Source: Octopus bimaculoides (Eukaryota). Taken from it: 35,154 nucleotides of DNA. The notes beneath the pieces are model-generated. The model was not told the origin of the DNA. It saw only the letters and a list, made by a program, of their open reading frames with translations, and made no database searches. The stretch covers positions 6,076,070-6,111,223 of the forward strand of contig NC_068982.1 of assembly GCF_001194135.2 (NCBI RefSeq), in the 5' to 3' direction. Positions 1 through 33,559 of the stretch are shown here, one piece after another. The first letter of the stretch is position 1, and every line of letters begins with the position of its first letter. The position numbers and the translations under genes were made by a program.

Positions 1-212
1 ATATATATATATATATATAATAATATAATGCATCAAGTTGAGTAAAAAGTAAGCAATGTTTTGAACTATGAACAATTTGTACCGGATTTTAGCAGTTTTG
101 AATTTTTTTAAACATAATTTTGCAGTTGTTTGATAATACAGACATAGACCTGCCCAAATGCATCAATAAATTAACATTGATATTTTTTGCACTTTTGTTA
201 GAGTCAGCTGAA

Positions 213-957
213 ATGGAAATGTCAAACCGCGATATTAGAGCAATTTTGATATTCAACTTCAAAAAAGGACGTAATGTAGCTGAAACTGCTCGCGATATCA
301 AGGAAATGTTTGATGAGGAAATGACCAGTGAGTGGTCAGCTCGAAAATCGTTTACACGATTTTGCAGTGGATACCTGAGATTTGAAGATCGTGAGCGTAG
401 TGGACGCCCATCCGTCATCGATGGCAGTCAATTAAAGACCGTCATTGAGAAAGATCCACGTAAAACCATTCGAGAACAGGCAAAAGAATTTCAAGTTAGC
501 TAGAAAACTGCATGCAACCATTTACGTGCGATCGGAAAATCAAAACAGCTCGATAAATGGGCACCACGCGATTTGAATGAAAATCAGAAAATGAGCAGAT
601 ATGAAATTTGTTCGTCGCTTCTTCTCTGTAACCAGACCGATCCATTTCTCGACTGTATTGTAACGTGCGATGAAAAGTGGATTCTGTGCAATAATAAAAA
701 ACGTTCGTCGCAGTGGTTGGATCAAAATGAAGGACTGAAAACCTTCCCTAAAGAAAGTTATGGCAACTGTTTGGTGGAGTATCCGGAAAAACCATTACTG
801 CAGAAACATATTGCTATGAAATTGCCAAAATGAATGAAAACCTGCTACTCTTCCGTCCGAGACTGGTCAACAGAAAAGAGTCAATCATTCTTCATGACAA
901 TGCTCGAACACACTAATGACGACCCAGAGGTTGAGGAACTTAGCTACGAAGTATATA
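213..957 (+). mobile_element. Decayed mariner (Tc1/mariner) transposase, running into an assembly gap
   Basis: Reads MEMSNRDIRAILIFNFKKG..TARDI..GRP (HTH), WAPRDL (WVPHEL-like), TCDEKW and LHDNARTH. Has an in-frame stop at 501-503, frameshifts and an internal deletion after TFPK. Confidence 0.93.
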
Positions 958-1522
958 NNNNNNNNNNNNNNNNNNNNNNNNNNNNNNNNNNNNNNNNNNN
1001 NNNNNNNNNNNNNNNNNNNNNNNNNNNNNNNNNNNNNNNNNNNNNNNNNNNNNNNNNNNNNNNNNNNNNNNNNNNNNNNNNNNNNNNNNNNNNNNNNNNN
1101 NNNNNNNNNNNNNNNNNNNNNNNNNNNNNNNNNNNNNNNNNNNNNNNNNNNNNNNNNNNNNNNNNNNNNNNNNNNNNNNNNNNNNNNNNNNNNNNNNNNN
1201 NNNNNNNNNNNNNNNNNNNNNNNNNNNNNNNNNNNNNNNNNNNNNNNNNNNNNNNNNNNNNNNNNNNNNNNNNNNNNNNNNNNNNNNNNNNNNNNNNNNN
1301 NNNNNNNNNNNNNNNNNNNNNNNNNNNNNNNNNNNNNNNNNNNNNNNNNNNNNNNNNNNNNNNNNNNNNNNNNNNNNNNNNNNNNNNNNNNNNNNNNNNN
1401 NNNNNNNNNNNNNNNNNNNNNNNNNNNNNNNNNNNNNNNNNNNNNNNNNNNNNNNNNNNNNNNNNNNNNNNNNNNNNNNNNNNNNNNNNNNNNNNNNNNN
1501 NNNNNNNNNNNNNNNNNNNNNN
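958..1522. other. Assembly gap (other gaps: 2192-2942, 3117-3126, 3702-4028, 17527-17696, 19923-20023, 23914-24438, 27486-27751, 32396-32733)
   Basis: Runs of N, almost all bordered by (TA)n, (TG)n, (GA)n or (ATT)n. Confidence 1.
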
Positions 1523-3186: not shown

Positions 3187-3345
3187 CGCTGTGTGGTAAG
3201 TAACTTGCTTCTCAACCACATGGTTCCGGGTTCAGTCCCACTGTGTGGCACATTTGGCAAGTGTCTTCTACTATAGCCTTGGGCCGACCAAAGCCTTGTG
3301 AGTGGATTTGGTAGACGGAAACTGAAAGAAGCCCGTCGTATATAT
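3187..3345 (+). mobile_element. tRNA-derived SINE family A, 5' half
   Basis: A-box-like GCTGTGTGGTAAG, B-box-like GGTTCAGTCCC, body TTGGCAAGTGTCTTCTACTATAGCC..GAAACTGAAAGAAGCCCGTCG, then (TA)n. The same body recurs at least seven times in the window. Confidence 0.85.
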
Positions 3346-3349
3346 ATAT

Positions 3350-3664
3350 TAAGGTTACGATGACGAGGGTCACAGCTGATAAATCAACGGAACAACTTGC
3401 TCGTGAAATTAGCGTGTAAGTGGCTGAGCACTCCACAGACACCTGTACCCTTAACGTAGTTCTCGGGGAGATTCCACGTCACACAGAGTGTAACAAGGCT
3501 GGCCCTTCGAAATACAGATACTACTCATTTTTGCCAGCTGAGTGGACTGGAGCAACATGAAATAAAGTGTCTTGCTCAAGGACACATTACGTCGCCAGGA
3601 ACTGAACTCACGACCTTACAATCGTGAAGAAAATGCCCCTAACCACTAAGCCACGCACCTTCAC
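3350..3664 (-). mobile_element. tRNA-derived SINE family C (CORE/V-like central segment)
   Basis: Minus strand starts GTGAAGGTGCGTGGCTTAGTGGTTAGGG (A box), then GTGAGTTCAGTTCC (B box) and GTGTCCTTGAGCAAGACACTT. Confidence 0.75.
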
Positions 3665-3669
3665 TATAC

Positions 3670-3701
<32 letters not shown>

Positions 3702-4111
3702 NNNNNNNNNNNNNNNNNNNNNNNNNNNNNNNNNNNNNNNNNNNNNNNNNNNNNNNNNNNNNNNNNNNNNNNNNNNNNNNNNNNNNNNNNNNNNNNNNNN
3801 NNNNNNNNNNNNNNNNNNNNNNNNNNNNNNNNNNNNNNNNNNNNNNNNNNNNNNNNNNNNNNNNNNNNNNNNNNNNNNNNNNNNNNNNNNNNNNNNNNNN
3901 NNNNNNNNNNNNNNNNNNNNNNNNNNNNNNNNNNNNNNNNNNNNNNNNNNNNNNNNNNNNNNNNNNNNNNNNNNNNNNNNNNNNNNNNNNNNNNNNNNNN
4001 NNNNNNNNNNNNNNNNNNNNNNNNNNNNAGTGGGTGGTTAAGCTGCACGGTTTACAAACACTCGGTTATAAAATTATTATTATTATTATTATTATCATTA
4101 TTATTATTATT

Positions 4112-4676
4112 CTGTTTATTCTGAAAGACTCTCGGATAGTTCTTAATTACCGGTTATTCTTTACCTGAAAGCAGACAATAACAAATCACCGAAGGTTTCG
4201 AGTAGTGCCTTCCCCTGTGACTCAAAGAGACAATACTCTCCTTAGAATGCGAGCTGTACCCAACAATGCTGTCTTCTGGATCACCTCGAGCCTGACTGCA
4301 GCTCCAATATTCTTAATATGCTTTTCAAAGCCCTTGGAAACTGTTCCTAATGCTCCAATTACCACCGGTATCACCATTACTTTCCTCATGCCCCATATCT
4401 TTCCTATCTCGTCCCACAGTGACTCGTATTTCTCAATCTTCTCAGTTCCTTTACATATCACCCTCGAATCGCCTGCAGCATCTATTATCTTTACTTTTTT
4501 TTCATTTTTATGGATGAGCATGATATCTGGCTGTCTCGCTTCTATGACTTGGTCACACTGCATTTTAAAATCCCAGAATATTTTATAATGCTCTTTTTCC
4601 ATTACTCTCTCTGGCTTGTGTTCATACCACTGTTCGGTTCTCTCGTGGTTTCCTTTACCGCACAACAGCCAGTGGA

Positions 4677-4677
<1 letters not shown>
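4112..4677 (-). mobile_element. 5'-truncated R4/Dong-like non-LTR retrotransposon (restriction-like endonuclease C-terminus plus 3' UTR)
   Basis: Open frame WYEHKPERV..KIFWDFKMQCDQVIEARQPDIMLI..EKIEKYESL..VIPVVIGALG..QKTALLGTARILRRVL ends in a stop at 4222-4224. Flanked by (ATT)n at 4073-4111 and 4678-4720. Confidence 0.88.
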
Positions 4678-4720
<43 letters not shown>

Positions 4721-4724
<4 letters not shown>

Positions 4725-5330
4725 GAAAACAGGCAGGTGTTACTGTAAAGGTGGCAGTGGGAGTAGCACCAGCAACAGTGACGGAAGCTATGGTAGCAGA
4801 AGCCACAACAACGACAACTATCGCAAGAAAACCAGAGCAAACAACACCAGAAGAAAACATACAAGACACGGACACCTCCATGCATCCAAGTGATGATGAG
4901 AGGGAAGTCCAAAAGTCTAACAAAACAAGAAAGAGACACAGAAAAAAATGGAGAAAGCTAAGAAACGGCAAACACAGGCACACCACGATCACCAGCATCA
5001 TCACAAACACCCGCAACGGAATCAAAAACACAATAAACTTTAAAAAGAAAAATGTCACTACAACAACAACAACCGTCCGCGTAGCAGCGGAATTTCTTGC
5101 CAGTGATGACGAAACTTCTTACACCATCAACTACAGATTCGCCCGCAGCACAGTAAGAATGACAGCAGCAGTAACAACAACAACAACAACAACAACAACA
5201 CCGACAGAAAGAACGTCAACTGAAATACCTTTCAGAGCAACAATAGCAAAAGCCAACATCAGAACAGTTCCGACCTCTACCACTACAGACAAAAGTGGCC
5301 CTCCGTCTTCTGTAGACCTACCAGCACGCA
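4721..5330 (+). mobile_element. Probable LINE ORF1 low-complexity tail fragment (Ala/Thr-rich, acidic, then Lys/Arg-rich, then Thr-rich)
   Basis: Stop-free, A-rich frame with the same compositional order as the ORF1 tail at 28960-29450. No true start codon; the ORF-track start lies inside the Dong-like element. Confidence 0.4.
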
Positions 5331-5419
5331 ATAAGCTTCAAGCTCACATTATACATGCACTTTTCCCCCTTGATTTAAGCCGAGATCTTGTGCGACAAAG
5401 GTAAAAAGAAACCGTTCAA

Positions 5420-5639
5420 ATTATCTTGTCTACTCTACGCACAAAGCCCGAAATTTTTGGGAAGGGGGCAAGTCGATTAGATCGACCCCAGTACGCAACT
5501 GGTACTTAATTTATCGACCCCCGAAAGGATGAAAGGCAAAGTCAACCTCGGCGGAATTCGAACGCAGAATCTAAATACAGACGAAATAACGCTAAGCATT
5601 TTGCCTGGCGTGCTAACCTTTCTGCCAGCTCTCCGCCTT
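5420..5639 (-). mobile_element. tRNA-derived SINE family B (MetaSINE-like central domain), near full length
   Basis: Reverse complement of GGCGG-GAGCTGGCAG..GCCTTTCATCCTTTCGGGGGTCGATAAATTAAGTACC..TTTGTGCGTAGAGTAGA. Confidence 0.85.
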
Positions 5640-5657
5640 AAAAATAAATTAAGTATA

Positions 5658-5819
5658 ATTTTTCTACTCAAAGCACAAAGCCAGACATTTTTGGGGAGGG
5701 AGTCAGTCGATTAGATCGACCCTGGAAGGATAAAAGGTAAAGTCGACCTCGGCGGAATTTGAAGTCAGAACGTAAAGACAGACGAAATACCGCTAACCTT
5801 TCTGCCAGCTCGCCGCCTT
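5658..5819 (-). mobile_element. SINE family B copy with two internal deletions
   Basis: Same consensus, but about 32 nt are missing between ATCGACCC repeats and about 21 nt between GCTAA repeats. Confidence 0.85.
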
Positions 5820-6001
5820 CGTTCAAATGATCTTTGTTAGATCAAAGAGAAACATATGCAACAAAAAGTCTGTCCCAAATTGAGAGCCTACTTGAAGGAA
5901 AGCAGAAAAGAAGTTAGTTATCAAAGACCAACATGCTCGCGATTACAATAACGATATAAGCAACAAATCACAAATACGACATCCACATTTGTTGAAAAAA
6001 A

Positions 6002-6029
6002 GCCGCAATAATTTTGCACCAACCCAATA
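6002..6029. repeat. Solo mariner terminal inverted repeat plus TA
   Basis: GCCGCAATAATTTTGCACCAACCCAA-TA is nearly identical to the TIR at 15213-15238. Confidence 0.75.
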
Positions 6030-8406
6030 AGAGAAATCATTAGGTTGATATAGTCGACTGTACCTCTCCTACAAAATCTCTAGCCTTGTGCCTGCTTAAG
6101 AAATTGTTGTTGTTTTTGCTGCAGTGCTGTTAATGTTACTGCTTGCCACTCTTGTTTGGAAACTATTTTATCTGTTACAAAACCAACCCACAAATTTGAC
6201 AGCTGAAAATGGCTGTTTAACATAAGTGTAAATTTTTTCGATTCGGTCTTCGCTGACACTTAAACAACTTTAGATCTAAGAGTACATGCTGACACTGACG
6301 TCATTTTTGGTCTATTTCATGGCAAGACTTGGTGGTTGTGGTTGATGACAATAACGATGTTGTCTTGCAATATACTAACACAATTACGTACCTTATAACA
6401 CCGAGATAATATTTGAAAAAGAATGGAGTATCAAGTTTCGCAGATGGCTTAAAGGTGGTGGGTAAATTATCTGGGCCTTTAATATTTTAAAGCGATATAG
6501 CGATCTCTTTGCTATAAAACCCCACCTCCACCCAAAATGCAACTTGTACCACCAAAGATAATATTTGAATTAAGTCTCATGTTTCGTTGATAGAAAAAGG
6601 TTCCCCTTTTCATTTATAGTTTATAAGATGGATTAACCCTTTGTGTCTTAATTTTTATTAATACTTTTAATACTGCACTAACTTATTTTGGAAGCCTTAT
6701 CAGACGTTTAATCGCCGTTTGTTCGCTGTTCAGCACGACTTGTTGAAAGGTGCTGAGACGAAAACGCTCGCTTGTATATATTCGAAGTGACATGCTTCGA
6801 ATAACAACAGCTGTGCAATCTGTTTAGGCGTTTGTATTGACAACAGGATCTGTTCTCCAAGACGGAGAAACTAAATGGTAACGACACTGGCAGCAGAAAT
6901 GATAACAATATCGAGAGTTGCAGTGCGGTGAACTCCTCGTTTCCTTCTCTGACATGCATAGTAAGAGAGGAGTCTACCACACTGCCGCCATCTTCTTGAT
7001 TTTCGTTTCCTTACGAGTAACAGAACAAATGGAAAAAAAAAAGAAAACAATAAATAAACGACATGGTTAGGAGTTGCTGGAGAAGACCATAAAAACCACA
7101 CGAAAGTCATGTTCGGTCGTGTGAAGAAAGGAACGTTGGTTGAGGCAACGGAGTGACCTTTGTTGCCAGTGCTTCTGTTCGCCTTGAATGCTGACTTTAA
7201 AATCTCTTTATCAACGAGATGAACCAACGCTGAAGCCTCTACACGATAGCTCTATAAACGGGAAATAACAGCCAAATCGCCCTCAGCACAAATCGTGCTG
7301 TCTCTAAAAAATAAAGATACTTAAGATAAGGCAGGACAGAGTGCATATGACTTAAAGAAAGCTGTGATGAACTTTTTTACTCGTTGAGAGCCAACTGAGG
7401 GATAAGAAAGAACATTCTCCTCCTCCTCTTCATCATCATCATCGTCATCATCATCAACAATAATGAAAAGGTCTGCCAAGTAACATGTACAGCGGTAGAG
7501 AACGACTAGAATTTGTTTATAATCAACATTTTGTGGTCATTTGTAAAGGAACACTATCGAATAAGCAATTTCTCCCGACGAAAGAAAAGTAATAAACTGC
7601 AGCTTCGATATTTACTGTGCATGCTGCGAAACCCCATCTCTTGCAGCAGTGTGGCTTTTGAAAGACACGGTCTGCTCCATCTAGTTTTCCACGAACGAAT
7701 CTAGCACCGAGTGTACCGCGACTGAGTATACCACAAGCAATGCCGATAAGTAACTTCGTTTTTGAGACACGACAGGCCCCGGCTTTGTGTGCATGTATTA
7801 TTGTTGGTTATCTCACTTCTTTTGCAGGAAGGAATCGCAAAAACATTTGTACTGCTGCAGCAAGCTGTAAGACTGGGTTTTCCCTCACATGTCAGTGAAG
7901 TCTTAAAAGACGGCCTATTTCTCCGACTGTATGTGTGTGTCAGTATTTGTTCCAGTCCACCTCCTTACCGCCCGCCAAGAGCAGATTGCTAACTGAGGGC
8001 ATATCCGTGGCAAATAACGAACGACACTGTGTCGTCTGTAAGTTGCACTGTCTCCAGAAAACAGCCGACTCTTAAATTTTCTTTGCAGACCCTTTGCTCA
8101 GCGTTGAAGTATGTGACAGCATCACTACACCCACCGCCGCTGGAAGGGCAACGGTGGTTGTTGTTTTCGTCGTCGCCATTGTCAGCAGACGGTAGTAATA
8201 TTCCATTAGCGAAACGTACGTGCGATTAGATCGAAGTCTATTCTATGAGCTCTTTTTGGGGGTCATTGTTTTCAAGATAGACTGCTATCGAAATTAATGA
8301 CCACCATGAACTCTTGTAACGCCAATTGTTAAGTTTTCACTCTTGAAAAATCACTAAATCGTCCTCATCCACCCGTAGGTACGCATACGACGGAAATTGT
8401 CGACGA

Positions 8407-9582
8407 TACGAGATTGATCCAGATAATGGTTATATGCTTGTTTTAATGCTTAAGTCAAGGGAAGGAAACCCATTCATTAAAGAATGGTGAAACTGAGATA
8501 TGACTTATAAATTAAGATATAGAATTAGCGAATATATTTCTCACCAGAAAAAAAAAAAACTGACTTGTGACTAGTCCAGAGTTACTTCATGCAGCTGAAT
8601 GTGCAGTCATGTGTTCATCTAGCGGTATGCAGCTGATCTGCACGTTTCCTCTAGGAATGTTCTTTACCAAGTTTCCGAGGCAGCTGGTATGTTAACTACA
8701 AACAAATTAGAATACTAAAAAGTAAGTGCCACCAGCTGGCAGACAAAAAGCATGGAAATGATGGAAAATGGTCCACGCCTCAGGTATCTATCGCTGTTAA
8801 CAAGACAAATGCTAAAGGAAGAAATTCTTTTCTACTCTAGGCACAAGGCCCGAAGTTTTGGGGGAGGGGGCCAGCACGTCGCCTTGTGCCAAAGGAAGAA
8901 ATTGGAGCCATTCTTATTGCGACACTGAAGGTGAAATTCTCGGACCACCACAAAACACACTTTAGATACAACATGAAGAGAGCACGGTCGCTTCAATGAA
9001 GCTCGAAAGTCGGAGGTCGGAAGGAAATCAGATTCATCTTAGATCTCTTTATAATGCAGAATGGCACGGCTCGGAACCCTCGGAAGGAACTGTAATTGGC
9101 CTCGGTAGGAGTATGGTTAGAAAGCAGAAATTAGAGGAATTGAAGGAAAGAGCATTGCTTGCAAGAGACGTTCCAGTTAAATTTGACTCGACATGAGGAA
9201 ATTTTGGCAGTTTGGTCAATATCAAGTGGTGTTTGATATTTCTTAGACGTTGGAGCGAGCTAGTTTGTTCGCCCCGATAACAGACGAATCTTCGATTCGC
9301 TTCGTGTGAGACCGGTGTCTGTACGCTGTTGCAGACGAGTTAGTCGATGGAAAAACGTAGAACTTTCTAGATGGGCGGGAAGCTGAAAACCGAACTGCAC
9401 ATTGCAGATAACAAGTTTATACGTCAGCGAGTGCACGCGTGCTACTTTGGAGATGTCATCGGGAACGTTTTCTGGCGATTAAATTTTCCTAGAAGTGTGA
9501 CGGCAATGAAACCTTTAGGCGGCAGGCTTACTGCTGCTGCCAATACCTTGAAACGCAGACAAATCTGCAGCGGAGGACGTTA
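8407..9582 (+). pseudogene. Highly degenerate, internally deleted 18S rRNA relic spanning the 5' to the 3' end
   Basis: 8407-8460 matches the canonical 18S start TACCTGGTTGATCC..TTAAGCCATGC at 38/54 ungapped. Further motifs in order: GTGAAACTG 8487, CAGAGTTACTTCATGC to 8592, AAATTAGAATACT near 8704, GCATGGAAATGATGG 8750, AGGTGAAATTCTCGGACC 8929, CGAAAGTCGGAGG 9004, GGAGTATGGTT..AGGAATTGA..GCA 9108-9154 (40/47), AATTTGACTC 9180, CCGATAAC 9274, GCACGCGTGCTAC 9433, 3' hairpin and end at 9554-9582. Confidence 0.88.
8827..8890 (-). mobile_element. SINE B 3' fragment inserted in the 18S relic, 13-bp TSD
   Basis: AAAGGAAGAAATT at 8814-8826 and 8891-8903. The insert matches the SINE B 3' end. Confidence 0.85.
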
Positions 9583-9950
9583 AACCAACTTGTTTTGTTA
9601 GTTTTTCTTTTATAGCCAATTATTTGCTCCTGTACCACAAAGCAAAAACAAATGCAACTTGTAACTCCCGAGATAATATCTGAAGAACAATTGAGTTTCA
9701 GATTTCGTTCACAGAAAAATAAGATCGTTGACCCTTTTTCTTTTTTCATCTTTCTTTTGCAACATATAAGAAGATTGTTTAACTCTTTGAAGTTCAACTT
9801 TTACATATTCTAGTGCAGCTTCAGAATACTTTGGCCAATTTTGATAAGAATATCTGATGTTTAATTATCCAGCATTTTGTAGATGTACTTTAAGCTGGTC
9901 CAACGAGTAGCAAGTTAATTAAAACCAATCGGAAATTCTTTTATCATTAA

Positions 9951-10188
9951 ATCTTTTTCCAAGTTTCATTCATTCGAATACGGTCATGCTGGAGCACAGC
10001 CTTGAAATATTTTTAGTCGAATGAATCGACCCCAGTACTTTTTTTTGTTTTTGTAAAGTTTGGTACTTATTCTATCGGAGTCTGTTGTCGAACTGCTAAG
10101 TTATGGGGACGTAAACTCACCAACAACGGTTGTTAAGCGGTGATGAGAGATATATACAGACACAATATCTCATGCACATGCACACACA

Positions 10189-10235
<47 letters not shown>

Positions 10236-10408
10236 GTGCTCGCGTGCGCGACGGGGTTTCTTTCAGTTTCTGTCTACCAAATCCACTCACAAGGCTTTGG
10301 TCGGTCCGAGGCTATAGTAGAAGACACCTGCCCAAGGTGCCACGTAGTGGGACTGAACTCAGAACCATGTGGTTGGGAAACAAACTTCTCACAGCCACTC
10401 TGGCGCCT
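9951..10408 (-). mobile_element. SINE family A, full length with internal (CA)n
   Basis: 3' end CGGTCATGCTGGAGCAC, internal microsatellite, and head ending GCGCC on the plus strand. Confidence 0.85.
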
Positions 10409-10531
10409 AATTATTCGACTCTCTGTTGTCCAAAGGATGCTACTTAAAGGGATGCCGCGTATATTGTTGGTTATTCTCTCAACTTTTGAAATGCGCTGCG
10501 ATAAAAATAATATCGTCCTTAGTGTTATTAA

Positions 10532-10754
10532 CCCATTAAGTCCCAGAGTACTTAAATTTCTGAATATTATTTTTAAATTTTTACAGATGATTAAAAATAG
10601 GTTAAAATGAAAAAAATAATTAGTAAAACTCCTTTACTTCAAGTAGAAATGGAAATACTCAGTGTCCTATAAATAGGACGCTGAGACAATGTGATACAGC
10701 TTAGTTAATGTTCTCATTTAGTGTCCTATTTATAGGACAGTAGGACTTAATAGT
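10532..10754. mobile_element. piggyBac-like MITE
   Basis: TTAA at 10528-10531 and 10755-10758. Left end CCCATTAAGTCCCAGAGT matches the reverse complement of the right end at 13/18. Palindromic subterminal repeats GTCCTATAAATAGGAC (10664-10679) and GTCCTATTTATAGGAC (10723-10738). Confidence 0.65.
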
Positions 10755-10963
10755 TTAACGAATTTGATTATCTATTTGCAAACTTCCAATATATGCCATC
10801 AGAAATTTTTGGTAAAAAACCTAGTTTTGTAGTTTTTAAGAACTCTGTGTTTTGTTTTTGTTGGTAACTTTTTATATTGTCGGAATCTGAAAATTTGCAT
10901 TTGCGAAAGTGACTTCTTCATGAAATTTGAACTTCTCTTTCAAGTTGCATTTTAACGAATCTA

Positions 10964-11018
10964 GCAGCTACGATGAAATGAATTCATGTTTCGTGTAAAT
11001 AGTCGAATCACTTGAAAC
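10964..11018 (+). pseudogene. Possible degenerate 5.8S rRNA core
   Basis: GCAGCTACGATGAAATGAATTCA and TCGAATCACTTGAAAC resemble 5.8S GCAGCTAGCTGCGAGAATTAATGTGAATTGCA and TCGACACTTCGAAC, and lie between the 18S-like and 28S-like relics. Confidence 0.4.
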
Positions 11019-11068
11019 CCGAAGATATATTTCTATCACCAAAAGGCAATATTCTTTTAGTCTTGGCT

Positions 11069-11289
11069 TTCTTTTCTATTCTAGGTACAAGGCCCGAAAT
11101 TTTTTTGATGGGGAGGAGGCCAGTCGATTTGATCGACCCCAGTACGCAACTGATACTTAATTTATCGACCCCGAAAGGATGAAAGGCAAAGTCGACCTCG
11201 GTCGAATTTGAACTCAGAACGTAAAGACGGACGAAAAACCGGTAAGCATTTCGCCCGGCGTTCTAGCGTTTCTGCCAGCTCGCCGCCTT
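11069..11289 (-). mobile_element. SINE family B, full length
   Basis: Matches the family B consensus from tail to head (GCCGCC at 11282-11287). Confidence 0.88.
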
Positions 11290-11292
11290 ACT

Positions 11293-11467
11293 ATATTCTT
11301 TTCTACTCTAGGAACAAGGACCGAAATTTTGGGGGAAGGGACCAGTCGATTAGATCGACCCCAGTACGCAACTGATATTTAATTTATCGACCCCGAAAGG
11401 ATGAAAGACAAAGTCGACCTCGGTGGAATTTGAACTCAGAACACGACAGACGAAATACTGCCAAGCA
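11293..11467 (-). mobile_element. SINE family B, 5'-truncated
   Basis: Second tandem copy of the same consensus lacking most of the head. Confidence 0.85.
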
Positions 11468-11510
11468 TGTAATTATTTTCAATTCCAATTACAATATTTT
11501 AGTGAAAGCA

Positions 11511-11617
11511 AGACGGCGAGCTGGCAGAGACGTTAGCACGCCGGGCGTACTGGGGTTGATCTAATCGATCGGCTCCCTCCCCCAAAATTTCGGGCCTTGT
11601 GCCCAGAGAAGAAAAAG
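11511..11617 (+). mobile_element. Internally deleted mini SINE B with 18-bp TSD
   Basis: Head joined directly to tail (GGGCG|TACTGGGG). AATATTTTAGTGAAAGCA at 11493-11510 and 11618-11635. Confidence 0.85.
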
Positions 11618-12010
11618 AATATTTTAGTGAAAGCACGAACTATTTTGAAAAGCAATGTTCTGTTGCATAATTACCATATTATTAGATTATTCACTAAAGA
11701 TATGATTAGTGTTGTAATATCTGACATTATATTTACGAGAGATATTAGCTTTTCGCCGTTCTCTGAAGTTGTTTAGCAGGCTGTAAGTGTAGTAAGCAGG
11801 TGGGAAGTAATGAGAACGGATCAACTTGGAATAGGATTATCTTTATTTTCATTGTTTTACATGTGATTTCAATACAGGTTGGCTCAGAAGGTTAGATCTG
11901 TCTTGAAAGTCAAGAGAATGAACTTAAAACCAATTGCAAAATACATGAAACTGTATATATGAATTATATAAAATTATGTACTATTTTATCTTTAATCTTT
12001 TAGTCTTGGT

Positions 12011-12101
12011 TTTATTTTATACTCTAAGCACAAGGCCCAAAATGGGGGTTTTTTGCTGAGAGAAGGCCAGTCGATTAGATCGACCCTAGTACGCAGCTGA
12101 T
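12011..12101 (-). mobile_element. SINE B 3' fragment
   Basis: ACTCTAAGCACAAGGCCC..CAGTCGATTAGATCGACCC. Confidence 0.8.
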
Positions 12102-12135
12102 AGCCATAACATGCCGGCTGCGAAATAGCATCGCT

Positions 12136-12630
12136 AGGTGAGACTGGCTGAAACTTAAGCAGCATCGCTGATTGACAGGTAGCGGTCTCCTTCATGGCGC
12201 CCCCTCCTCCTGGTTCGAAGGCTTGTACCACCAGAGATCGTCGGCTCTGGCTGCTGGAACTGAAACTAACACGACACTGTTGGAAGGCAGGTTTTGAGAA
12301 GGCGCGGGCTAAGATTACACGCCCTTCCATTGGTCAGTTCAAGTTTAGACAGTGTCACGTGACAACTTGCTGGTGCTGGCTGCTGGAGCCTACCAGCGAG
12401 TATTTGAAGGAAAATTTGACAGGATGATCAGTCACCCGCATCGAAGAGGCCAGGGAACAGAAGAAAGAAGGAGAAAGAAGAAATGCACTCAACACCAGAG
12501 CTGAAGACACCACCGAAAAATGGTCGAGGAGTAGGGGCCGAAACCGAGCGTGGTTCCTCCTGAAGATGTCTTTAGCCACTAGATCCTATCTGTTGAGCTG
12601 TTGAGGTAGCAAACCACGAAACACGGTTGG
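12136..12630 (+). pseudogene. Degenerate, massively deleted 28S rRNA relic
   Basis: Collinear LSU motifs: GCTGAAACTTAAGCA 12147 (cf. CCCGCTGAAYTTAAGCAT), GGAACTGAAACTAAC 12256 (cf. GGAAAAGAAACTAAC), AGTATTTGAAGGAAAATTTGACAG 12399 (cf. AGTACCGTGAGGGAAAGTTGAAAAG), CCGAAAAATGGT 12513 (cf. CCGAAAGATGGT), TGGTTCCTCCTGAAG 12551 (cf. TGGTTCCCTCCGAAG), CCACTAGATCCTATCT..TAGCAAACCAC 12576-12617 (cf. CCACTGTCCCTATCT..TAGCGAAACCAC). Confidence 0.65.
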
Positions 12631-12632
12631 AA

Positions 12633-12994
12633 TTCTTATCCTTTACATGTTTCAGTCATTAGATTGCGGCCATGCTTGAAGAATTTTTTTTTGTCGAATG
12701 AATCAATTCGAGTAATTTATTTTTACAACCTGGTACGTATTCTATCGGATTCCTTTGTCGAACCGCTAAGTAACGAGGACGTAAACACATCAACACTGGT
12801 TTTTAATCAGTGATGAGAAACAGACACAAAGACAAACACACACACACATACTTATATACGACAGGCTTCTTTCAGTTTTCGTCTATCAAATCCACTCACA
12901 AGCTATAGTAGAAGACACTTGCCCAAGGTATCACGCGGTGGGACTGAACCCGGAACCATGTGGTTGGGAAGTAAGCTTCTAACCACACAACCAC
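12633..12994 (-). mobile_element. SINE family A with small internal deletion
   Basis: Family A tail, (CA)n and head, with about 20 nt missing after CCACTCACA. Confidence 0.85.
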
Positions 12995-13020
12995 CTTTAG
13001 GGTATCTATGAGAAAGTTAT

Positions 13021-13402: not shown

Positions 13403-13872
13403 TGGTTCGGGTATTTTAACATCTTTATTGCATTTATTAGACCCGGCAAATTTTTATGATGGAAACTGATTGAATTACAGGCTTTTTTTTTCTTTTTTCA
13501 ATTTTTAACATCCAAATGTCAAGATTCTCACCCACAGTTGTTGTTGTTTTAACATTAAGTGGAGACTTCGTGCTGATATAGCTATTTCACATTTATAGGG
13601 GATAAATCCCTACAAATGTGAAATAGCGATATGATTGAACTATTTCTGTGACTTAGTCATAAGAGATGCTTGAGAAACTAGTTGCTCACTGAAATATAAT
13701 ATATTTATCATATTCTCGCATGTCATTTTTCAGTGTCTCCAAACGACATAAATCTCTGAAGTAGAAATGATAAAGATTTCACCGCACTACTCCAGAATTC
13801 TGTAACGATTCTTCCAAATCTCTATATAGTTACCTAAAGCTAGTCTTCAAAATTTCATTATTAGTTCTGTAG

Positions 13873-14293
13873 ATAAGGCGGTGACCTGGCAGAAACGTTA
13901 GCACACCGGGCGAAATGCTTAACGGTATTTCGTATGCCTTTACGTTCTGAGTTCAAATTCCGCCGAGGTCGACTTTGCCCTTCATCCTTTCGGGGTCGAT
14001 AAATTAAGTACCAGTTACGCACTAAGGTTGATGTAATCGACTTAATCCTTTGTCTGTCCTTGTTTGTTCCCTCTATGTTTAGACCCTTGTGGGAAATAAA
14101 GAAATAAGAAACATTAGCACGGCGGGCGAAATGCTTAGCTGTCTTTACGTTCTGAGTTCAAATTCCGCCGACATAGATTTTGCCTTTCATCCTTTCGGGG
14201 TCGATAAATTAAATACCAGCTGCGTACTGGCGTCGATCTAATCGACTGGTTTCCTCTCTCATAATTTCTGGCCTTGTACTCAGGGTAGAAAAG
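13873..14293 (+). mobile_element. Tandem SINE B dimer (alternative-tail copy plus standard-tail copy) under one 16-bp TSD
   Basis: ATTATTAGTTCTGTAG at 13857-13872 and 14294-14309. The first copy ends in a different tail (TTAATCCTTTGTCTGTCC..). Confidence 0.85.
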
Positions 14294-17506: not shown

Positions 17507-17696
17507 GATAAATAGCAAATATTATANNNNNNNNNNNNNNNNNNNNNNNNNNNNNNNNNNNNNNNNNNNNNNNNNNNNNNNNNNNNNNNNNNNNNNNNNN
17601 NNNNNNNNNNNNNNNNNNNNNNNNNNNNNNNNNNNNNNNNNNNNNNNNNNNNNNNNNNNNNNNNNNNNNNNNNNNNNNNNNNNNNNNNNNNNNNNN

Positions 17697-17739
<43 letters not shown>

Positions 17740-17985
17740 TATGATAAATAGTAAATATTATATATATTATATATATATATATACATATATATGATAAATA
17801 GTATATATATATATATATATATACAACAAGCTTCTTTCAGTTTCCGTCTATCAAATCCACTCACAAGGCTTTGGTCGACCCGAGACTGTAGTAGAAGACA
17901 CTTTCACAAAAGTGCCACGCAGTGGGTTTGAACCCGGATCCATGTGGTTGGGAAGCAAGCTTCTTATCAAATAGCCACGCCTGCG
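17199..17985 (-). mobile_element. SINE family A with expanded internal AT-rich micro/minisatellite spanning a gap
   Basis: 3' half at 17199-17395 and 5' half at 17826-17985. The unit ACATATATATGATAAATAG is repeated between them. Confidence 0.8.
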
Positions 17986-18003: not shown

Positions 18004-18215
18004 TTCTATTCAAGGCACAAGGCCCGAAATTTTTTGGGGAAAGGGCCAGTCGATTAGATCGACCCCAGTACGCAACTGGTACTTAATTTGTCGACCCCAA
18101 AAGGATGAAAGGCAAAATCGACCTCGGTAGAATTTGAACTCAGAATGTAAAGACAAACGAAATATCACTAAGCATTTCGCCCGGCGTGCTAACGTTTCTG
18201 CCAGCGTCCTGCCTT
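18004..18215 (-). mobile_element. SINE family B, full length
   Basis: Consensus match from tail to head. Confidence 0.88.
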
Positions 18216-19922: not shown

Positions 19923-22029
19923 NNNNNNNNNNNNNNNNNNNNNNNNNNNNNNNNNNNNNNNNNNNNNNNNNNNNNNNNNNNNNNNNNNNNNNNNNNNNNN
20001 NNNNNNNNNNNNNNNNNNNNNNNATATATATAGGCTGTCTATAAATATTACCTTTACATTTTGAAAAATTCAGAAGAAAATGAAACATAATGGTAACTCA
20101 AGAAATTTTATTGGGAAGCATTGACAAACAAATAAAGTTTTATTACAAAGACCAGAACACTTCTACGTGATTGTTTCACAAAGCTGTCTTTAACCGCAAT
20201 GGCGGTCTCAATGTCGTGACAGAAGCGACTCCATGACTGGTTTACGTTCATACTGTCCATCACATCCACGATGGTCAACTTCAAAATACCTTCCCTATTG
20301 TGAATCTGTCGGCTGGACAACCTCTCTACGACTTACCAGATGTATTACTCCATGGGTTTAAAAAAAGAGAGGTTGGAGTCACAGGGTCACATCTTGAAAA
20401 TTTTAGCCAGTCACTAATGAGTTGTGAGGACTATATGTCAAAGAGCAGGGACGTGCTATATAAGTATGGCCTTCCAATACTTAACTACCGTATTCACTGC
20501 CTAGATGGAGAGGCATTGACTCTGAGGGCCAGCTAAGATAGTGAGTTGCACGATATTGGTCTTATTACACGCGACCACTTTGACCATGAAAATCGGTGTG
20601 AATATCCGGGGATACCACTGTTGTGTCCGCAAAGATCCATCTATTGTATCCACAGTTCATTTTCCAATCTTGATCTAAGGTCTTATTGAAGAAGAAACAA
20701 TGTGACGGGTCATATGGAATGCATGAATGTGTATTGCAAGTGTTTTCATTTGATCAAATGGTTCTCTCGGGCCGAACACAGACGTTCCCCTTCCCATCAT
20801 GAAGAACATGTTCCTGGCGTCTCCATGTACAATGCGTCAGATAATGGTCTCTGCCCTCAGGAATAACTCGATGATGCCGCCTATTCACTTGCAGGAATCG
20901 TCGTTGTTGAAGTTTTGATGATTAGATTCACTGCAAGAACTAGGCTGTCCTGATAACATCTGGCTGCTGAAAATGTCTCTTTGTCTTGGCTATGAATGAC
21001 ATGTCCCTGCCAGGGACCTGCAACGCTTTCCTGAAACTAAAATCAAGGACTTGGTCACGTTCAAAGAGCAGTCGATCTTCGCATTGCTCTGTTTGACTGT
21101 TATAGCCACTAGCATCACGTGCTCTGACGTTTTTAAAGTTAAATTGATATCTGAGATGTTGATGCTATCAATACAACTGGAAAAGAAAAGAGGAAATTAA
21201 AATTTGACGCATACAGCATATCGTTATGTTTCGTTGGTTTCTATATACTGCCTCGCCAAAGTATATGTGTGTGCGTGTGTGTAAATGTATGTAGAAACAC
21301 AGAGGTTGTTTGAATGGTAGTGAAAATTTTGAATGTGAGAGATACACACGTGCTAAAATAACATCCAGTTTATTCTAATGGAATAAAATATATAAACATT
21401 AAAACAAAACCTGTGGAATAGTTTTGGGGTTAGGTGCTTTGTCGAAACGGAAATATAAAGACTTAAGAAAAGAGGAAAACGTCCATGTGACCAACACTTC
21501 AAATAGACACGACTATCGTATTGAATAGGCAGACTAAATGGACGGCGTTCACTGTGAGTATCATTACAAAAGTAGTTGTCAAAAGGATTCGCATAACGTT
21601 TCAGTTTTCAATTTAATGCTTTGGTACATTGGCATAGAAGAATTTAAGTTTAGTGGAAATTGTAAACATCTCATCAATTTATTGACACTTTCATGGTGTC
21701 AGTAATACAAAAACTCTCTTTTAGCACACAAAAGCTAACGACATTTTATTTGTCTTGAAACCTTAACTAATCCAGTTCTATTCCGCTCTACTAATTTCTT
21801 GAAATACAATACACCACAAGCAATATTTCTTGACTTCAACATATGTATACTCTAAAGTTGACTTTGAGGATATGTAAAACAGCTACAGAACATTTAAGAT
21901 AAGCAATTCATTTAAAAGTCGTCGGATGGTGGTGATATATATACATGACTAGATACATACATACGTACGTACGTACATACATGTATACGTAACATATATA
22001 TCTGTATGTTGTCCATCCATCCGCTTATA

Positions 22030-23913: not shown

Positions 23914-24438
23914 NNNNNNNNNNNNNNNNNNNNNNNNNNNNNNNNNNNNNNNNNNNNNNNNNNNNNNNNNNNNNNNNNNNNNNNNNNNNNNNNNNNNNNN
24001 NNNNNNNNNNNNNNNNNNNNNNNNNNNNNNNNNNNNNNNNNNNNNNNNNNNNNNNNNNNNNNNNNNNNNNNNNNNNNNNNNNNNNNNNNNNNNNNNNNNN
24101 NNNNNNNNNNNNNNNNNNNNNNNNNNNNNNNNNNNNNNNNNNNNNNNNNNNNNNNNNNNNNNNNNNNNNNNNNNNNNNNNNNNNNNNNNNNNNNNNNNNN
24201 NNNNNNNNNNNNNNNNNNNNNNNNNNNNNNNNNNNNNNNNNNNNNNNNNNNNNNNNNNNNNNNNNNNNNNNNNNNNNNNNNNNNNNNNNNNNNNNNNNNN
24301 NNNNNNNNNNNNNNNNNNNNNNNNNNNNNNNNNNNNNNNNNNNNNNNNNNNNNNNNNNNNNNNNNNNNNNNNNNNNNNNNNNNNNNNNNNNNNNNNNNNN
24401 NNNNNNNNNNNNNNNNNNNNNNNNNNNNNNNNNNNNNN

Positions 24439-24506
<68 letters not shown>

Positions 24507-25102: not shown

Positions 25103-25477
25103 TTCTTTTACTTCTTTCAGTCATTTGACTGCAGCCATGCTAGAGCACCGCATTTGGTCGACCAAGTGGACCCCAGGACTTATTCTTTGTATGTCTAGTA
25201 CTTATTCTATCGGTCTCTTTTTGCCGAACCGCTGCACAACGGGGACATAAACACACCAACAACGGTTCTCAAGCGACGGTGAGGGGACAAACACACATAC
25301 ACACACATATATACGATGGGCTTCGTTCAGTTTCCGTCTACCAAATCCACTCACAAGGCTTTGGTCGGCCCGAGGCCATAGTAGGAGACACTTGCCCAAG
25401 GTACCACGCAGTGGGACTGAACCCAGAACCATGTGGTTGGGAAGCAAGCTCCTTACCACACAGCCATGCATGCGCCT
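25103..25477 (-). mobile_element. SINE family A, full length
   Basis: Tail, short internal (CA)n and head ending GCGCC. Confidence 0.88.
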
Positions 25478-27244: not shown

Positions 27245-27953
27245 TGGGGATGAGTGAGAGGGGTAGATATAGGTTGTGATATTCGCATCGCAAATGTATC
27301 AGATAAATTCTGCATAACAGAACACGAATAACATACACCACTTTATCGTAGAAATAACGAGAAAAACAGATGACACCAAGGAGAAATATTGATAATTGTT
27401 GTTGCTATTGTTATTATTATAACGAATTAATTATTGAAAAAAAAAAAAAAAACGAATTTATTATTATTATTATTATTATTATTATNNNNNNNNNNNNNNN
27501 NNNNNNNNNNNNNNNNNNNNNNNNNNNNNNNNNNNNNNNNNNNNNNNNNNNNNNNNNNNNNNNNNNNNNNNNNNNNNNNNNNNNNNNNNNNNNNNNNNNN
27601 NNNNNNNNNNNNNNNNNNNNNNNNNNNNNNNNNNNNNNNNNNNNNNNNNNNNNNNNNNNNNNNNNNNNNNNNNNNNNNNNNNNNNNNNNNNNNNNNNNNN
27701 NNNNNNNNNNNNNNNNNNNNNNNNNNNNNNNNNNNNNNNNNNNNNNNNNNNGTGTATTTTTGTTGAAAGAAAGAATAAAAAAGACAGCAGAGCCAGGAAA
27801 AACAACGGTTCCGTTTTCGACAACATTGTGCGAAATAAAAACAGCAATTTCGAAAATATAAACAATGAGGGCCCATTCGTGAACGAAGCAGGGGACGATG
27901 CGAGTACTAGTAACAACAACAACAACAACAGCAGCGCCATCAACAATAACAAT

Positions 27954-28166
27954 ACTTTTCTACTCTAACACAAGGACCGAAATTTTGGGGGAGGTGTCAG
28001 TCGATTAGATCGATCCCAGTACGCAACTGGTACTTAATTTATCGACCCAGAAAGGAGGAAAGGCAAAGTCGACCTCGGCGGAATTTGAACTCAGAACATA
28101 AAGGCATACGAAATTCCGCTAAGCATTTCGCCCGGCGTGCTAACGTTTCTGCCAACTCACCGCCTT
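27954..28166 (-). mobile_element. SINE B inserted in the LINE 5' region, 15-bp TSD
   Basis: ATCAACAATAACAAT at 27939-27953 and ATCAACAACAACAAT at 28167-28181. Confidence 0.88.
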
Positions 28167-32353: not shown

Positions 32354-32395
<42 letters not shown>

Positions 32396-33559
32396 NNNNN
32401 NNNNNNNNNNNNNNNNNNNNNNNNNNNNNNNNNNNNNNNNNNNNNNNNNNNNNNNNNNNNNNNNNNNNNNNNNNNNNNNNNNNNNNNNNNNNNNNNNNNN
32501 NNNNNNNNNNNNNNNNNNNNNNNNNNNNNNNNNNNNNNNNNNNNNNNNNNNNNNNNNNNNNNNNNNNNNNNNNNNNNNNNNNNNNNNNNNNNNNNNNNNN
32601 NNNNNNNNNNNNNNNNNNNNNNNNNNNNNNNNNNNNNNNNNNNNNNNNNNNNNNNNNNNNNNNNNNNNNNNNNNNNNNNNNNNNNNNNNNNNNNNNNNNN
32701 NNNNNNNNNNNNNNNNNNNNNNNNNNNNNNNNNTTTGTTGTCTACACTACCTGTCTTCATCTTTTTTTTTTTGTGTGAATTCTCCCTATACATATATCGA
32801 AAATAAAGATATTTTATTCCACACGGGTAGAAATATAAGAAAAATAGAAGTTGAAAATTCACTGAGAATAGTTAAAATATTTTTTATTAAAATATTTGAA
32901 GCTTTAACCGGTTTTGCAGTTTACACTGATTTTCAAAAAGTTCAAATAGAAAGACCTGGCTTATGTCGCGACTGTCATGCTTCTGATTCGTGGTTGAAGC
33001 TTGCCTTATTTTTATAGGGAGTTCATGGCTCAAATCAGTATCTGTTTTGAATAGGATTTGATTGGTAGAGGATAGTCACATGACTGGTCTTAGAAATGTT
33101 TGTAGTTTCCTCCGCTACGTCTGTGTGTTAGTATCGAGTGACAATGTTTGGCGTCGTAAGTTAAAGATGACACGGTTGACTGAACAAACAAGTCCAAACA
33201 CTCAATGCTCTGAATGTTTTCTGTTAAGTGTTTGTAGAGAATGAACACATGATTAAGTTTCTAACCTTTTGTACCTTTGACTATTATTCCGTGCACTAGT
33301 GTCACATGACAATATGTTTTGCGCCTAAAAGGAGGTCCGACACGGTTGAGTGAACATGTCACGCAGTTACTAACTCTGGGATTACACTGCGAAAATTCGT
33401 AAAACAGCAATAATTTCATATAGTAGCAATGTTATAAATCGTAATATGTTCCTAGAAAAATATATTTATAAAATTTATAACGCTCTGTACTTCAGCTGTA
33501 GTTTGTGGGCTGATAGCGGAGTACTTGAAATTTTGCGCCATACAAGTGCATATATATCT

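What the first reader, a model, noticed from the sequence alone, without database searches (positions are those of the whole stretch)
8407..12630. Fossil, miniaturised rDNA transcription unit (18S - 5.8S - 28S) hidden among SINEs
Seen: conserved SSU motifs from the exact 5' end to the exact 3' end occur in order on the plus strand in about 1.1 kb (excluding a SINE). A weak 5.8S-like core follows, then six LSU motifs in order within about 0.5 kb. Subtracting recognisable TE insertions leaves spacers of roughly 0.7 kb and 0.5 kb, plausible for ITS1 and ITS2. Known: eukaryotic 18S is about 1.8 kb or longer and the LSU span covered is over 2 kb, and GGTT..AAAGC at 9115-9125 fits the animal rather than fungal/plant h27 form. 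Inference: an old orphan rDNA unit, about 25-35 percent diverged even at near-universal positions, predating the SINEs in it. Alternatives are a once-functional divergent rDNA class or an integrated foreign rDNA. Standard rRNA annotators would probably miss it.
Basis: partly seen in the sequence, partly recalled or inferred. Interest (0 to 1): 0.8.

Follow-up and report, generated by a model that had tools for sequence, protein, structure and literature searches.

The report
Decayed 18S rRNA pseudogene, no 5.8S/28S
The window really does hold an old, broken, single-copy copy of the small-subunit (18S) ribosomal RNA gene that is decaying as junk DNA. The claimed 5.8S and 28S parts are not there, so it is an ordinary rRNA pseudogene, not a hidden miniature rDNA unit.

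Summary
Partly confirmed. A decayed 18S-like sequence lies on the + strand from 8407 to about 9465. My SSU profile, built from six metagenomic eukaryotic SSUs, hits 8634-9287 at 85.9 bits (E=1.3e-27), or 91.7 bits after repeat removal. Weaker colinear hits cover the exact 5' end and SSU ~1340-1490. Colinear chain score is 154.5; the shuffle maximum is 80.3.

The rest fails. No 5.8S or LSU signal appears with nhmmer, Smith-Waterman or motif chaining. The 'LSU' stretch 12100-12630 is a dispersed repeat with tens to hundreds of genomic copies. The last ~320 nt of 18S are undetectable, so the 'exact 3' end' is unsupported.

The relic is single-copy and has no RNA-seq reads in three libraries. Three related species hold it at about 4-6% divergence, the same as its flanks. 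Only 57% of consensus rRNA base pairs survive, which matches the random expectation of 58.6%; real SSUs keep >=95%. Substitutions run towards A+T. A SINE fragment with a perfect 13-nt target duplication interrupts it.

Best reading: a neutrally decaying SSU-only rDNA pseudogene (orphon), a known kind (Robicheau et al. 2017, human). Low interest.

The parts
8407..8522 (+). Relic of the SSU rRNA 5' end (SSU positions 1-113 of reference L036). It starts at mature position 1: TACGAGATTGATCC against TACCTGGTTGATCC.
   Evidence: nhmmer 8412-8458 to profile 6-51, E=0.0014 region-limited, 0/100 shuffles give a hit. Alignment identity is 72% over 47 nt, then 68-87% in the next blocks.
8523..8651 (+). 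Collapsed stretch standing where SSU ~114-710 (about 600 nt) should be. It includes an A-run at 8548-8560. Homology here is not demonstrable.
   Evidence: Only tiny, over-fitted blocks in the cheap-gap global alignment. No nhmmer hit.
8652..9287 (+). Core of the relic: SSU central domain and start of the 3' major domain (SSU 711-1339), interrupted by a SINE fragment.
   Evidence: nhmmer 85.9 bits, E=1.3e-27; 91.7 bits, E=1.8e-30 after repeat removal. Block identities 70-89%.
8827..8890 (+). 64-nt 5' fragment of the abundant SINE family, inserted into the relic. It is flanked by a perfect 13-nt target-site duplication AAAGGAAGAAATT (8814-8826 and 8891-8903).
   Evidence: Read directly. Read depth about 2,400 per orientation against ~1 for the neighbours. 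Contigs of species B, C and D break at the same place.
9317..9465 (+). Weaker relic of SSU ~1340-1490, including GCAATAACAGGT and GCACGCGCGCTACACTG equivalents.
   Evidence: nhmmer 9363-9465 to profile 1694-1806, E=0.0032 region-limited, 0/100 shuffles. Blocks.
9466..9590 (+). Homology is not demonstrable.
   Evidence: Smith-Waterman against the last 60 or 150 nt of SSU is no better than shuffles. No nhmmer hit.
9591..12099 (.). Supposed ITS1-5.8S-ITS2. It is a mix of single-copy AT-rich DNA (9591-9950, 10760-11060, 11620-11990), SINE copies (about 9950-10410, 11060-11620, 11990-12100) and a moderately repeated palindrome-bearing element (10487-10760). There is no 5.8S.
   Evidence: No 5.8S hit. 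Depth profile. SINE copies (families D12, D14, D15, D16, D19).
12100..12630 (.). Supposed LSU block. It is a mosaic of dispersed repeats, not rDNA.
   Evidence: Raw DNA read depth is about 110-1,400 (both orientations summed) against ~0-5 for single-copy bins. Contig word depth is 940-209,900 against 11-20. No LSU similarity. No Pfam domain in its ORFs.

Best explanation
Window 8407 to about 9465 (+) is a single-copy, non-functional, neutrally decaying pseudogene of the nuclear small-subunit (18S-type) rRNA gene: an rDNA 'orphon' fragment.

Shown:
- It is homologous to eukaryotic SSU rRNA from mature position 1 to about position 1490.
- It has lost about a third of that length, mostly in one region.
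- It has about 22-38% substitutions, biased towards A+T and placed without regard to rRNA base pairing.
- It carries a later SINE insertion.
- It is not transcribed in the libraries examined.
- It is shared by at least four related species, in which it diverges at the same rate as its flanks.

Inferred:
- A piece of the host's own rDNA was displaced from an rDNA array, or captured at a break, long before these species split. On substitution counts this was roughly an order of magnitude earlier than the split.
- That piece was SSU only, or SSU plus spacer that is now unrecognisable.
- It has drifted since then and does nothing today.
For: Homology: nhmmer 85.9 bits, E=1.3e-27, with colinear 5' and 3' side hits, and 91.7 bits after repeat removal. 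Chain score 154.5 against a shuffle maximum of 80.3.

Loss of structure: 92/162 (57%) of consensus pairs are canonical, against >=95% in all 52 panel SSUs. The null mean is 58.6% (95% range 53-64%) when the relic's states are permuted among paired columns. This also explains why Infernal finds nothing.

Mutational decay: G/C>A/T 82 against A/T>G/C 44; transitions 89 against transversions 68; GC 0.50 in real SSU, 0.43 in the relic, 0.39 in the window.

Single copy: contig word depth 11.4-12.8, as in the flanks, and raw-read depth ~0-5.

No transcription: 0 reads in unique parts in RNA runs X24, X25 and X26. 15 likely-RNA runs of the species (kind guessed by the index) hold 0.00 of its words.

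Orthology and neutrality: species B differs at 49/852 and 57/1161 positions. Species D differs at 12/251 (flank plus start), 30/633 (relic) and 9/213 (downstream). Species C differs at 33/549 and 29/632. A 15-nt segment after 9217 is present in B and D and absent here, so indels are still accruing.

SINE insertion with a perfect target-site duplication inside the SSU alignment.

Such degraded, displaced rDNA is documented in the human genome (PMC5381670) and in fungi (PMC5555474, listed).
Against: Host origin is therefore inferred from context and from the animal-type h27 motif, not tested.

The mode of origin (DNA fragment or retro-copied rRNA) is open.

The absence of 5.8S and LSU means either that they were never there or that they were deleted, and these cannot be told apart.

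The RNA evidence covers three libraries read at about 6% each, plus an index look-up. It does not cover all tissues.
Confidence: 0.85

Rival explanations
1. One reading: a whole fossil 18S-5.8S-28S unit, with 5.8S and LSU remnants present at about 10960-11020 and 12100-12630 but decayed or shrunk below detection.
For: The prior is reasonable, because a real SSU relic lies 2.5 kb upstream on the same strand. Two short LSU 5'-end-like strings occur in order. 12135-12161 matches L041 LSU 12-40 (24 of 30 alignment columns, 4 of them gaps) and 12256-12271 matches LSU 55-70 (14/16).
Against: Those matches are not significant (fraction of shuffles >= observed is 0.06 and 0.39). They lie 95 nt apart instead of 15. 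They also sit inside a dispersed repeat with tens to hundreds of copies.

No other LSU or 5.8S signal exists with nhmmer --max at E<=100-1000, before or after repeat removal. The chain score equals that of shuffles and of the minus strand.

5.8S and the LSU cores are at least as conserved as SSU. At the same age they should be as visible as the 86-bit SSU hit.
Confidence: 0.07
2. Same pseudogene, but made through RNA: a reverse-transcribed copy of mature 18S rRNA inserted by retrotransposon machinery, which would explain why no spacer, 5.8S or 28S follows.
For: Homology starts at mature SSU position 1. Only SSU is detectable in the 35-kb window. The genome is full of active-looking SINEs, so reverse transcriptase was available.
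Against: There is no poly(A) tail or flanking target-site duplication at the presumed ends. However, about 30% decay could have erased both.

The pattern here is a complete 5' end with an undetectable 3' end. That is the opposite of the usual 5' truncation of LINE-mediated copies.

The reference holds no ETS, so the start at position 1 may simply be where comparable sequence begins.
Confidence: 0.2
3. Integrated foreign rDNA, for example from a parasite or symbiont, transferred into the host germ line.
For: None specific. The host rDNA was not available for comparison. The relic is about equally distant (52-56.5% in a forced alignment) from all 52 panel SSUs.
Against: It is single-copy, embedded in host SINE-rich DNA, interrupted by a host SINE, and orthologous in four species.

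Its divergence is explained by structure-blind, AT-biased decay rather than by a divergent functional source.

It carries GGTT/AAAGC in h27. From my own knowledge this is the animal form. All 47 panel sequences that show the motif have it, but the panel was selected with an animal-type pattern, so this does not discriminate.
Confidence: 0.03
4. A once-functional or still functional divergent rRNA or non-coding RNA gene.
For: None beyond its persistence in several species.
Against: Base pairing is at the random level. About 600 nt of the 5' domain, including the region of the decoding 530 loop, are collapsed. A SINE is inserted in the central domain. No RNA reads were found. Divergence between species equals that of the flanks.
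Confidence: 0.02

Closest known systems
Displaced, degraded rDNA pseudogenes ('orphons') of animal genomes, as described for human by Robicheau et al. 2017 (PMC5381670)
   Same: rDNA-derived sequence away from detectable rDNA neighbours in this window, strongly degraded, apparently without function and on its way to random sequence. It is found only with sensitive sequence comparison.
   Different: The human cases include near full-length 45S+IGS units. Here only about 1 kb of SSU is recognisable, with no 5.8S, 28S or identifiable spacer. The chromosomal position (centromere-proximal or not) is unknown.
rRNA pseudogenes that escaped concerted evolution in fungi (PMC5555474; title and start of abstract only, seen)
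   Same: rRNA gene copies that escaped concerted evolution.
   Different: I did not read that paper beyond its title and the start of its abstract, so I make no detailed comparison. The copy here is a solitary, very old, fragmentary one in an animal genome.
Functional eukaryotic SSU rRNA gene (Rfam RF01960)
   Same: Colinear sequence homology over SSU 1-113 and 711-1490. Many near-universal strings are recognisable, for example GGTGAAATTCT, CGAAAGT, GGAATTGA, TTAATTTGACTC and CCGATAAC.
   Different: It fails the covariance model entirely (no hit at E<=10). 43% of consensus pairs are broken, about 600 nt of the 5' domain are missing and the 3' end is undetectable. It is also single-copy and untranscribed.
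rRNA-derived SINEs (e.g. SINE28, PMC4994717, listed)
   Same: Genomic sequence descended from rRNA.
   Different: Those are multi-copy mobile elements. This relic is single-copy and shows no sign of mobility.

Membership tests
rRNA pseudogene / rDNA orphon | Statistically significant sequence homology to an rRNA gene | tested here: met
   nhmmer 85.9 bits, E=1.3e-27 against an SSU profile. Chain score 154.5 against a shuffle maximum of 80.3.
rRNA pseudogene / rDNA orphon | Lies outside a functional, homogenised rDNA array (solitary copy in non-rDNA context) | tested here: met
   Single-copy depth equal to the flanks. No other rRNA signal in 35 kb. The chromosome-scale position is unknown.
rRNA pseudogene / rDNA orphon | Disabled: structure broken, large deletions or insertions, not expressed | tested here: met
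   57% canonical pairs, equal to the random expectation. SSU 114-710 collapsed. SINE insertion with target duplication. 0 RNA reads in 3 libraries.
rRNA pseudogene / rDNA orphon | Evolves neutrally | tested here: met
   Divergence from species B, C and D is about 4-6% in the relic and in the flanks alike. Substitutions are AT-biased and transition-rich. The counts are small and partly come from truncated lists.
Complete rDNA transcription unit (18S-ITS1-5.8S-ITS2-28S) | 18S present from end to end | tested here: inconclusive
   The 5' end and positions up to ~1490 are present. The last ~320 nt are undetectable.
Complete rDNA transcription unit (18S-ITS1-5.8S-ITS2-28S) | 5.8S downstream on the same strand | tested here: not met
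   No nhmmer hit at E<=1000. Smith-Waterman fractions are 0.125-0.945.
Complete rDNA transcription unit (18S-ITS1-5.8S-ITS2-28S) | 28S/LSU downstream on the same strand | tested here: not met
   No nhmmer hit. Motif chain is no better than shuffles or the minus strand. The candidate block is a dispersed repeat.
Complete rDNA transcription unit (18S-ITS1-5.8S-ITS2-28S) | Spacers homologous to host ETS/ITS | not testable with these tools
   Host rDNA could not be retrieved.
Rfam RF01960 SSU_rRNA_eukarya | Covariance-model score at or above the gathering threshold (50 bits) | tested here: not met
   No SSU hit even at E<=10 in 5-kb and 1.2-kb searches. The same tool scores real SSUs at 1,600-1,760 bits.
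Processed (retro-copied) rRNA pseudogene | 3' poly(A) and flanking target-site duplication; absence of spacer sequence | tested here: inconclusive
   No A-tail or duplication is visible at the presumed ends. The 3' end itself cannot be located, and decay could have erased these marks.

The most novel reading that the evidence does not exclude
The relic might be the last visible part of a whole ancient rDNA unit or a vanished nucleolar-organiser array edge. In that case the surrounding single-copy DNA (8300-8406, 9466-9950, 10760-11060, 11620-11990) would be fossil ETS/ITS/IGS. This would make the locus a dated marker of rDNA array relocation, and a yardstick for neutral substitution and deletion rates in this lineage. 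An even less likely variant is that the source was a foreign (parasite) rDNA.
Probability: 0.08. Interest if true: 0.35.

Novelty: new member of a known kind. Interest (0 to 1): 0.15.

Why it matters
It matters little biologically. It is one more example of rDNA escaping its array and turning into junk DNA.

It has some practical value:
- It shows that a structure-aware annotator (Infernal/Rfam) can completely miss an rRNA pseudogene that a plain sequence profile finds at E~1e-27. The cause is that random decay breaks base pairs.
- Such relics can mislead 18S-based barcoding or contamination screens.
- A single-copy relic with a known, near-invariant ancestor sequence is a clean internal gauge of neutral substitution spectrum, AT drift and indel accumulation in this genome.

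Tried and rejected
1. Rfam cmscan on the whole window (gathering), on 8000-13000 and on 8390-9600 at E<=10 gave only chance-level snoRNA/miRNA-type matches and no rRNA. The sequence-only profile showed it to be a false negative for SSU.

2. The first chaining script timed out. It was rerun with a coarser seed.

4. A scan of viral contigs for a non-animal-type 18S motif, to obtain an outgroup, gave 0 matches.

5. A forced MAFFT alignment of the relic with 52 panel SSUs gave 52-56.5% identity to all of them and no informative nearest relative.

6. Pfam on four ORFs in 11992-12579 gave nothing above threshold, only a sub-threshold Thyroglobulin_1 match at E=0.016.

7. ARAGORN found no tRNA-like gene in the window, so the tRNA origin of the SINE heads was not shown.

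8. The 5.8S-like string I saw by eye at about 10960-11020 (ACGATGAAATGAA ... GTAAATAGTCGAATCACTTGAAAC) was considered. It was rejected as not distinguishable from chance by nhmmer or Smith-Waterman.

9. The string GTGCCACCAGCTGG at 8726-8739 looks like the 530-loop motif. It aligns instead within SSU ~780-805, colinear with its neighbours. As a 530-loop match it would be out of order.


Full report
Observation.

Rfam/Infernal found no rRNA family in the window at gathering thresholds. It found none at E<=10 in 8000-13000 or in 8390-9600 alone, only chance-level snoRNA/miRNA-type matches of 17-21 bits. Taken at face value this would refute the finding.

By eye, however, long strings resembled 18S closely. 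One example is GGTGAAATTCTCGGACC ... CGAAAGTCGGAGGTCGGAAGGAAATCAGAT ... GGAGTATGGTTAGAAAGCAGAAATTAGAGGAATTGAAGG ... TTAAATTTGACTCGACATG. I therefore fetched real rDNA.

A metagenome scan with an animal-type 18S string gave 120 loci. Rfam delimited complete SSU, 5.8S and LSU genes in several of them. L036, for instance, has SSU 427-2235, 5.8S 3338-3492 and LSU 4093-7803.

The SSU relic is real.

A sequence-only profile of six of these SSUs hits window 8634-9287 (+) at 85.9 bits, E=1.3e-27. Every other hit in 35 kb, on both strands, scores below 0 bits. Region-limited searches add two further hits. The first is 8412-8458, matching profile columns 6-51, the very 5' end (E=0.0014). The second is 9363-9465, matching columns 1694-1806 (E=0.0032). 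Both are colinear, and 100 dinucleotide shuffles of each region gave no hit at all.

A chain of colinear BLAST HSPs against L036 SSU scores 154.5. The shuffle maximum is 80.3, other window segments reach 67.6, and the minus strand scores 58.8.

A cheap-gap global alignment gives this map:
- 8407-8522 corresponds to SSU 1-113.
- 8523-8651 is a collapsed ~130 nt standing for SSU ~114-710.
- 8652-9287 corresponds to SSU 711-1339.
- 9317-9453 corresponds to SSU ~1340-1487.

Identity in the solid blocks is 68-89%. At 415 columns that are invariant in 52 distinct panel SSUs, the relic agrees at 62%. That figure comes from a MAFFT alignment, so it is a lower bound.

The rest of the claimed unit is not there.

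The last ~320 nt of SSU cannot be found. There is no nhmmer hit beyond column 1806 of 2148. Smith-Waterman scores against the last 60 or 150 nt are at or below the shuffle median.

For 5.8S there is no nhmmer hit at E<=1000 in 9590-12100. Smith-Waterman against three references gives fractions of shuffles >= observed of 0.125, 0.835 and 0.945.

For LSU there is no nhmmer hit in the whole window, in 11600-12700, in 9590-13000, or in the repeat-free concatenate. The 'six motifs in order' test on 12100-12630 gives chain scores of 47.0 and 67.6 against two LSUs. The shuffle medians are 52.2 and 55.8, and the minus strand scores 42.8 and 65.8.

The only suggestive item is a pair of LSU 5'-end-like strings at 12135-12161 and 12256-12271. 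They are not significant (0.06 and 0.39). They are also wrongly spaced and lie in repeated DNA.

Read depth settles what 12100-12630 is. In a raw DNA run of the same species it has about 110-1,400 reads of depth, where single-copy bins have 0-5. Contig word depth is 940-209,900 against 11-20. It is therefore a mosaic of dispersed repeats. Its ORFs have no Pfam domain above threshold.

Nature of the relic.

Copy number. Contig word depth over the relic is 11.4-12.8, the same as the flanks. Only the 64-nt SINE fragment at 8827-8890 is deep.

Expression. Three RNA-seq libraries of the species give zero reads on the unique parts. Fifteen likely-RNA runs of the species (kind guessed by the index) hold none of its 31-mers.

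Orthology. Contigs of three related species cover the relic at single-copy depth.
- Species B differs at 49/852 and 57/1161 positions.
- Species D differs at 12/251 (flank plus start), 30/633 (relic) and 9/213 (downstream).
- Species C differs at 33/549 and 29/632.

This is a uniform 4-6%, with no slowing inside the relic. A 15-nt piece (CACGATCAGATTCTT, after 9217) is present in B and D and absent here, so indels continue to accrue.

Structure. I derived 206 consensus pairs with RNAalifold on 15 panel SSUs. All 52 panel sequences keep >=95% of them as canonical pairs. The relic keeps 92 of 162 scorable pairs (57%). Permuting its states among paired columns with the same consensus base gives a mean of 58.6% (95% range 53-64%), so pairing has had no influence on which substitutions survived. 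This explains the Infernal failure. It also rules out divergence as a functional rRNA, whether as a divergent host class or as a fast-evolving foreign rRNA, as the source of the differences.

Mutation spectrum. G/C>A/T changes number 82 against 44 for A/T>G/C. Transitions number 89 against 68 transversions. GC falls from 0.50 in real SSU to 0.43 in the relic, towards the window's 0.39. CpG falls from 6.8 to 4.8 per 100 nt. This is what in-place neutral decay produces.

SINE insertion. The insert at 8827-8890 is bounded by a perfect 13-nt duplication, AAAGGAAGAAATT, at 8814-8826 and 8891-8903. It sits inside the SSU alignment. Contigs of B, C and D break at the same point, so the insertion is probably shared.

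Mechanism.

Shown: this is a disabled, silent, neutrally evolving, single-copy SSU rDNA relic that predates the split of at least four species.

Inferred age: about 0.3 substitutions per site on the relic's branch (Jukes-Cantor, from about 27% difference in solid blocks), against about 0.027 per lineage between species A and B. This suggests an age some ten or more times that split.

Inferred origin: a piece of the host's own rDNA was displaced from an array or captured at a chromosome break. The process is described for human by Robicheau et al. 2017, who report highly degraded rDNA units at many sites and a graded 'rDNA-like signal' on the way to random sequence (PMC5381670).

A retro-copy of mature 18S rRNA is a live alternative for the route of origin (my estimate 0.2). 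Homology starts at mature position 1 and nothing but SSU is detectable. However, there is no A-tail or target duplication, and the pattern of complete 5' end with missing 3' end is the reverse of the usual truncation.

Nothing requires it. The locus is embedded in host repeats, is orthologous across species, and carries the h27 form GGTT..AAAGC. From my own knowledge that is the animal form. My panel cannot discriminate, because it was selected with an animal-type pattern.

Comparison and verdict.

The relic works like, and qualifies as, an rRNA pseudogene or rDNA orphon. All four defining features I could test are met. It is not a member of Rfam RF01960 by score. It is not a complete rDNA unit either, since the 5.8S and LSU features were tested and not met.

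The extension to a 'miniaturised 18S-5.8S-28S unit' with ITS-sized spacers is over-reading of short motifs in repeat-derived DNA.

Novelty: a new member of a known kind. Interest is low. It has minor methodological value as an example of a covariance-model blind spot for decayed RNA genes, and as a neutral-rate gauge.

Noticed in passing
window 8000-13000 (against 12, 13): Infernal/Rfam reports nothing at E<=10 for a sequence that a plain nhmmer SSU profile scores at 86-92 bits (E about 1e-27 to 1e-30). Random decay has broken 43% of the base pairs, which probably costs the covariance model its score. This is a general blind spot for old RNA pseudogenes.
   Followed up: partly
window 10487-10760: A moderately repeated element. 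Raw DNA depth is about 10-100, and it is also present in RNA reads. It carries two copies of a palindrome-like string GTGTCCTATAAATAGGAC / GTGTCCTATTTATAGGAC (about 10663-10680 and 10721-10738). It looks like a MITE-type or hairpin-bearing repeat.
   Followed up: no
window 12314-12400 and 12488-12661: Inside the repeat mosaic, many DNA and RNA reads join 12398 back to 12344 ('goes back 55', about 165 DNA reads). Other genomic copies therefore carry a tandem duplication of this ~55-nt piece. The copy number differs sharply between neighbouring sub-blocks, from about 110 to about 1,400 reads.
   Followed up: no
window 5451-5806, 11060-11620, 11990-12100, 13868-14049(-), 18028-18215, 27979-28166: Many copies and fragments of one very abundant SINE-like family (core GCCAGTCGATTAGATCGACCCCAGTACGCAACTG...). 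Read depth reaches about 20,000-40,000 per orientation, and it is abundant in RNA-seq. Two head-to-tail copies and an inverted fragment are clustered at 11060-11620. ARAGORN finds no tRNA-like gene in the window.
   Followed up: partly
window 9950-10410, 12640-13000, 17828-17977, 25318-25466, 33565-33947: A second abundant SINE-like family (core GCTATAGTAGAAGACACTTGCCCAAGGTGCCACGCAGTGGGACTGAACCC...) that regularly carries an internal (CA)n/(TG)n microsatellite. Depth reaches about 37,000 per orientation at 12923-13000.
   Followed up: no
window 8827-8890: The SINE fragment inside the relic stops after about 50 nt of SINE head and then runs into CACGTCGCCTTGTGCC. Its last 10 nt are the reverse complement of GGCACAAGGC at 8840-8849, giving a small hairpin-like inverted repeat at the truncation point. 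This may be a trace of an aborted or snapped-back insertion.
   Followed up: no
window about 1000-1500, 2000-2940, 3500-4030, 17527-17700, 19925-20020, 23915-24470, 27490-27900, 32395-32740: Runs of N (assembly gaps), typically next to AT/GT/GA microsatellites. GC reads 0-0.2 in these 500-nt bins. The very long 'inverted repeats' reported are N-runs matching N-runs, not real repeats.
   Followed up: partly
window 9217/9218 (orthologues in species B, C and D): A 15-nt segment CACGATCAGATTCTT is present in species B and D but absent in the window's species. Species C has separate 5-nt and 1-nt deletions at 9218-9224. The same few bases of the relic have been hit by independent indels.
   Followed up: partly
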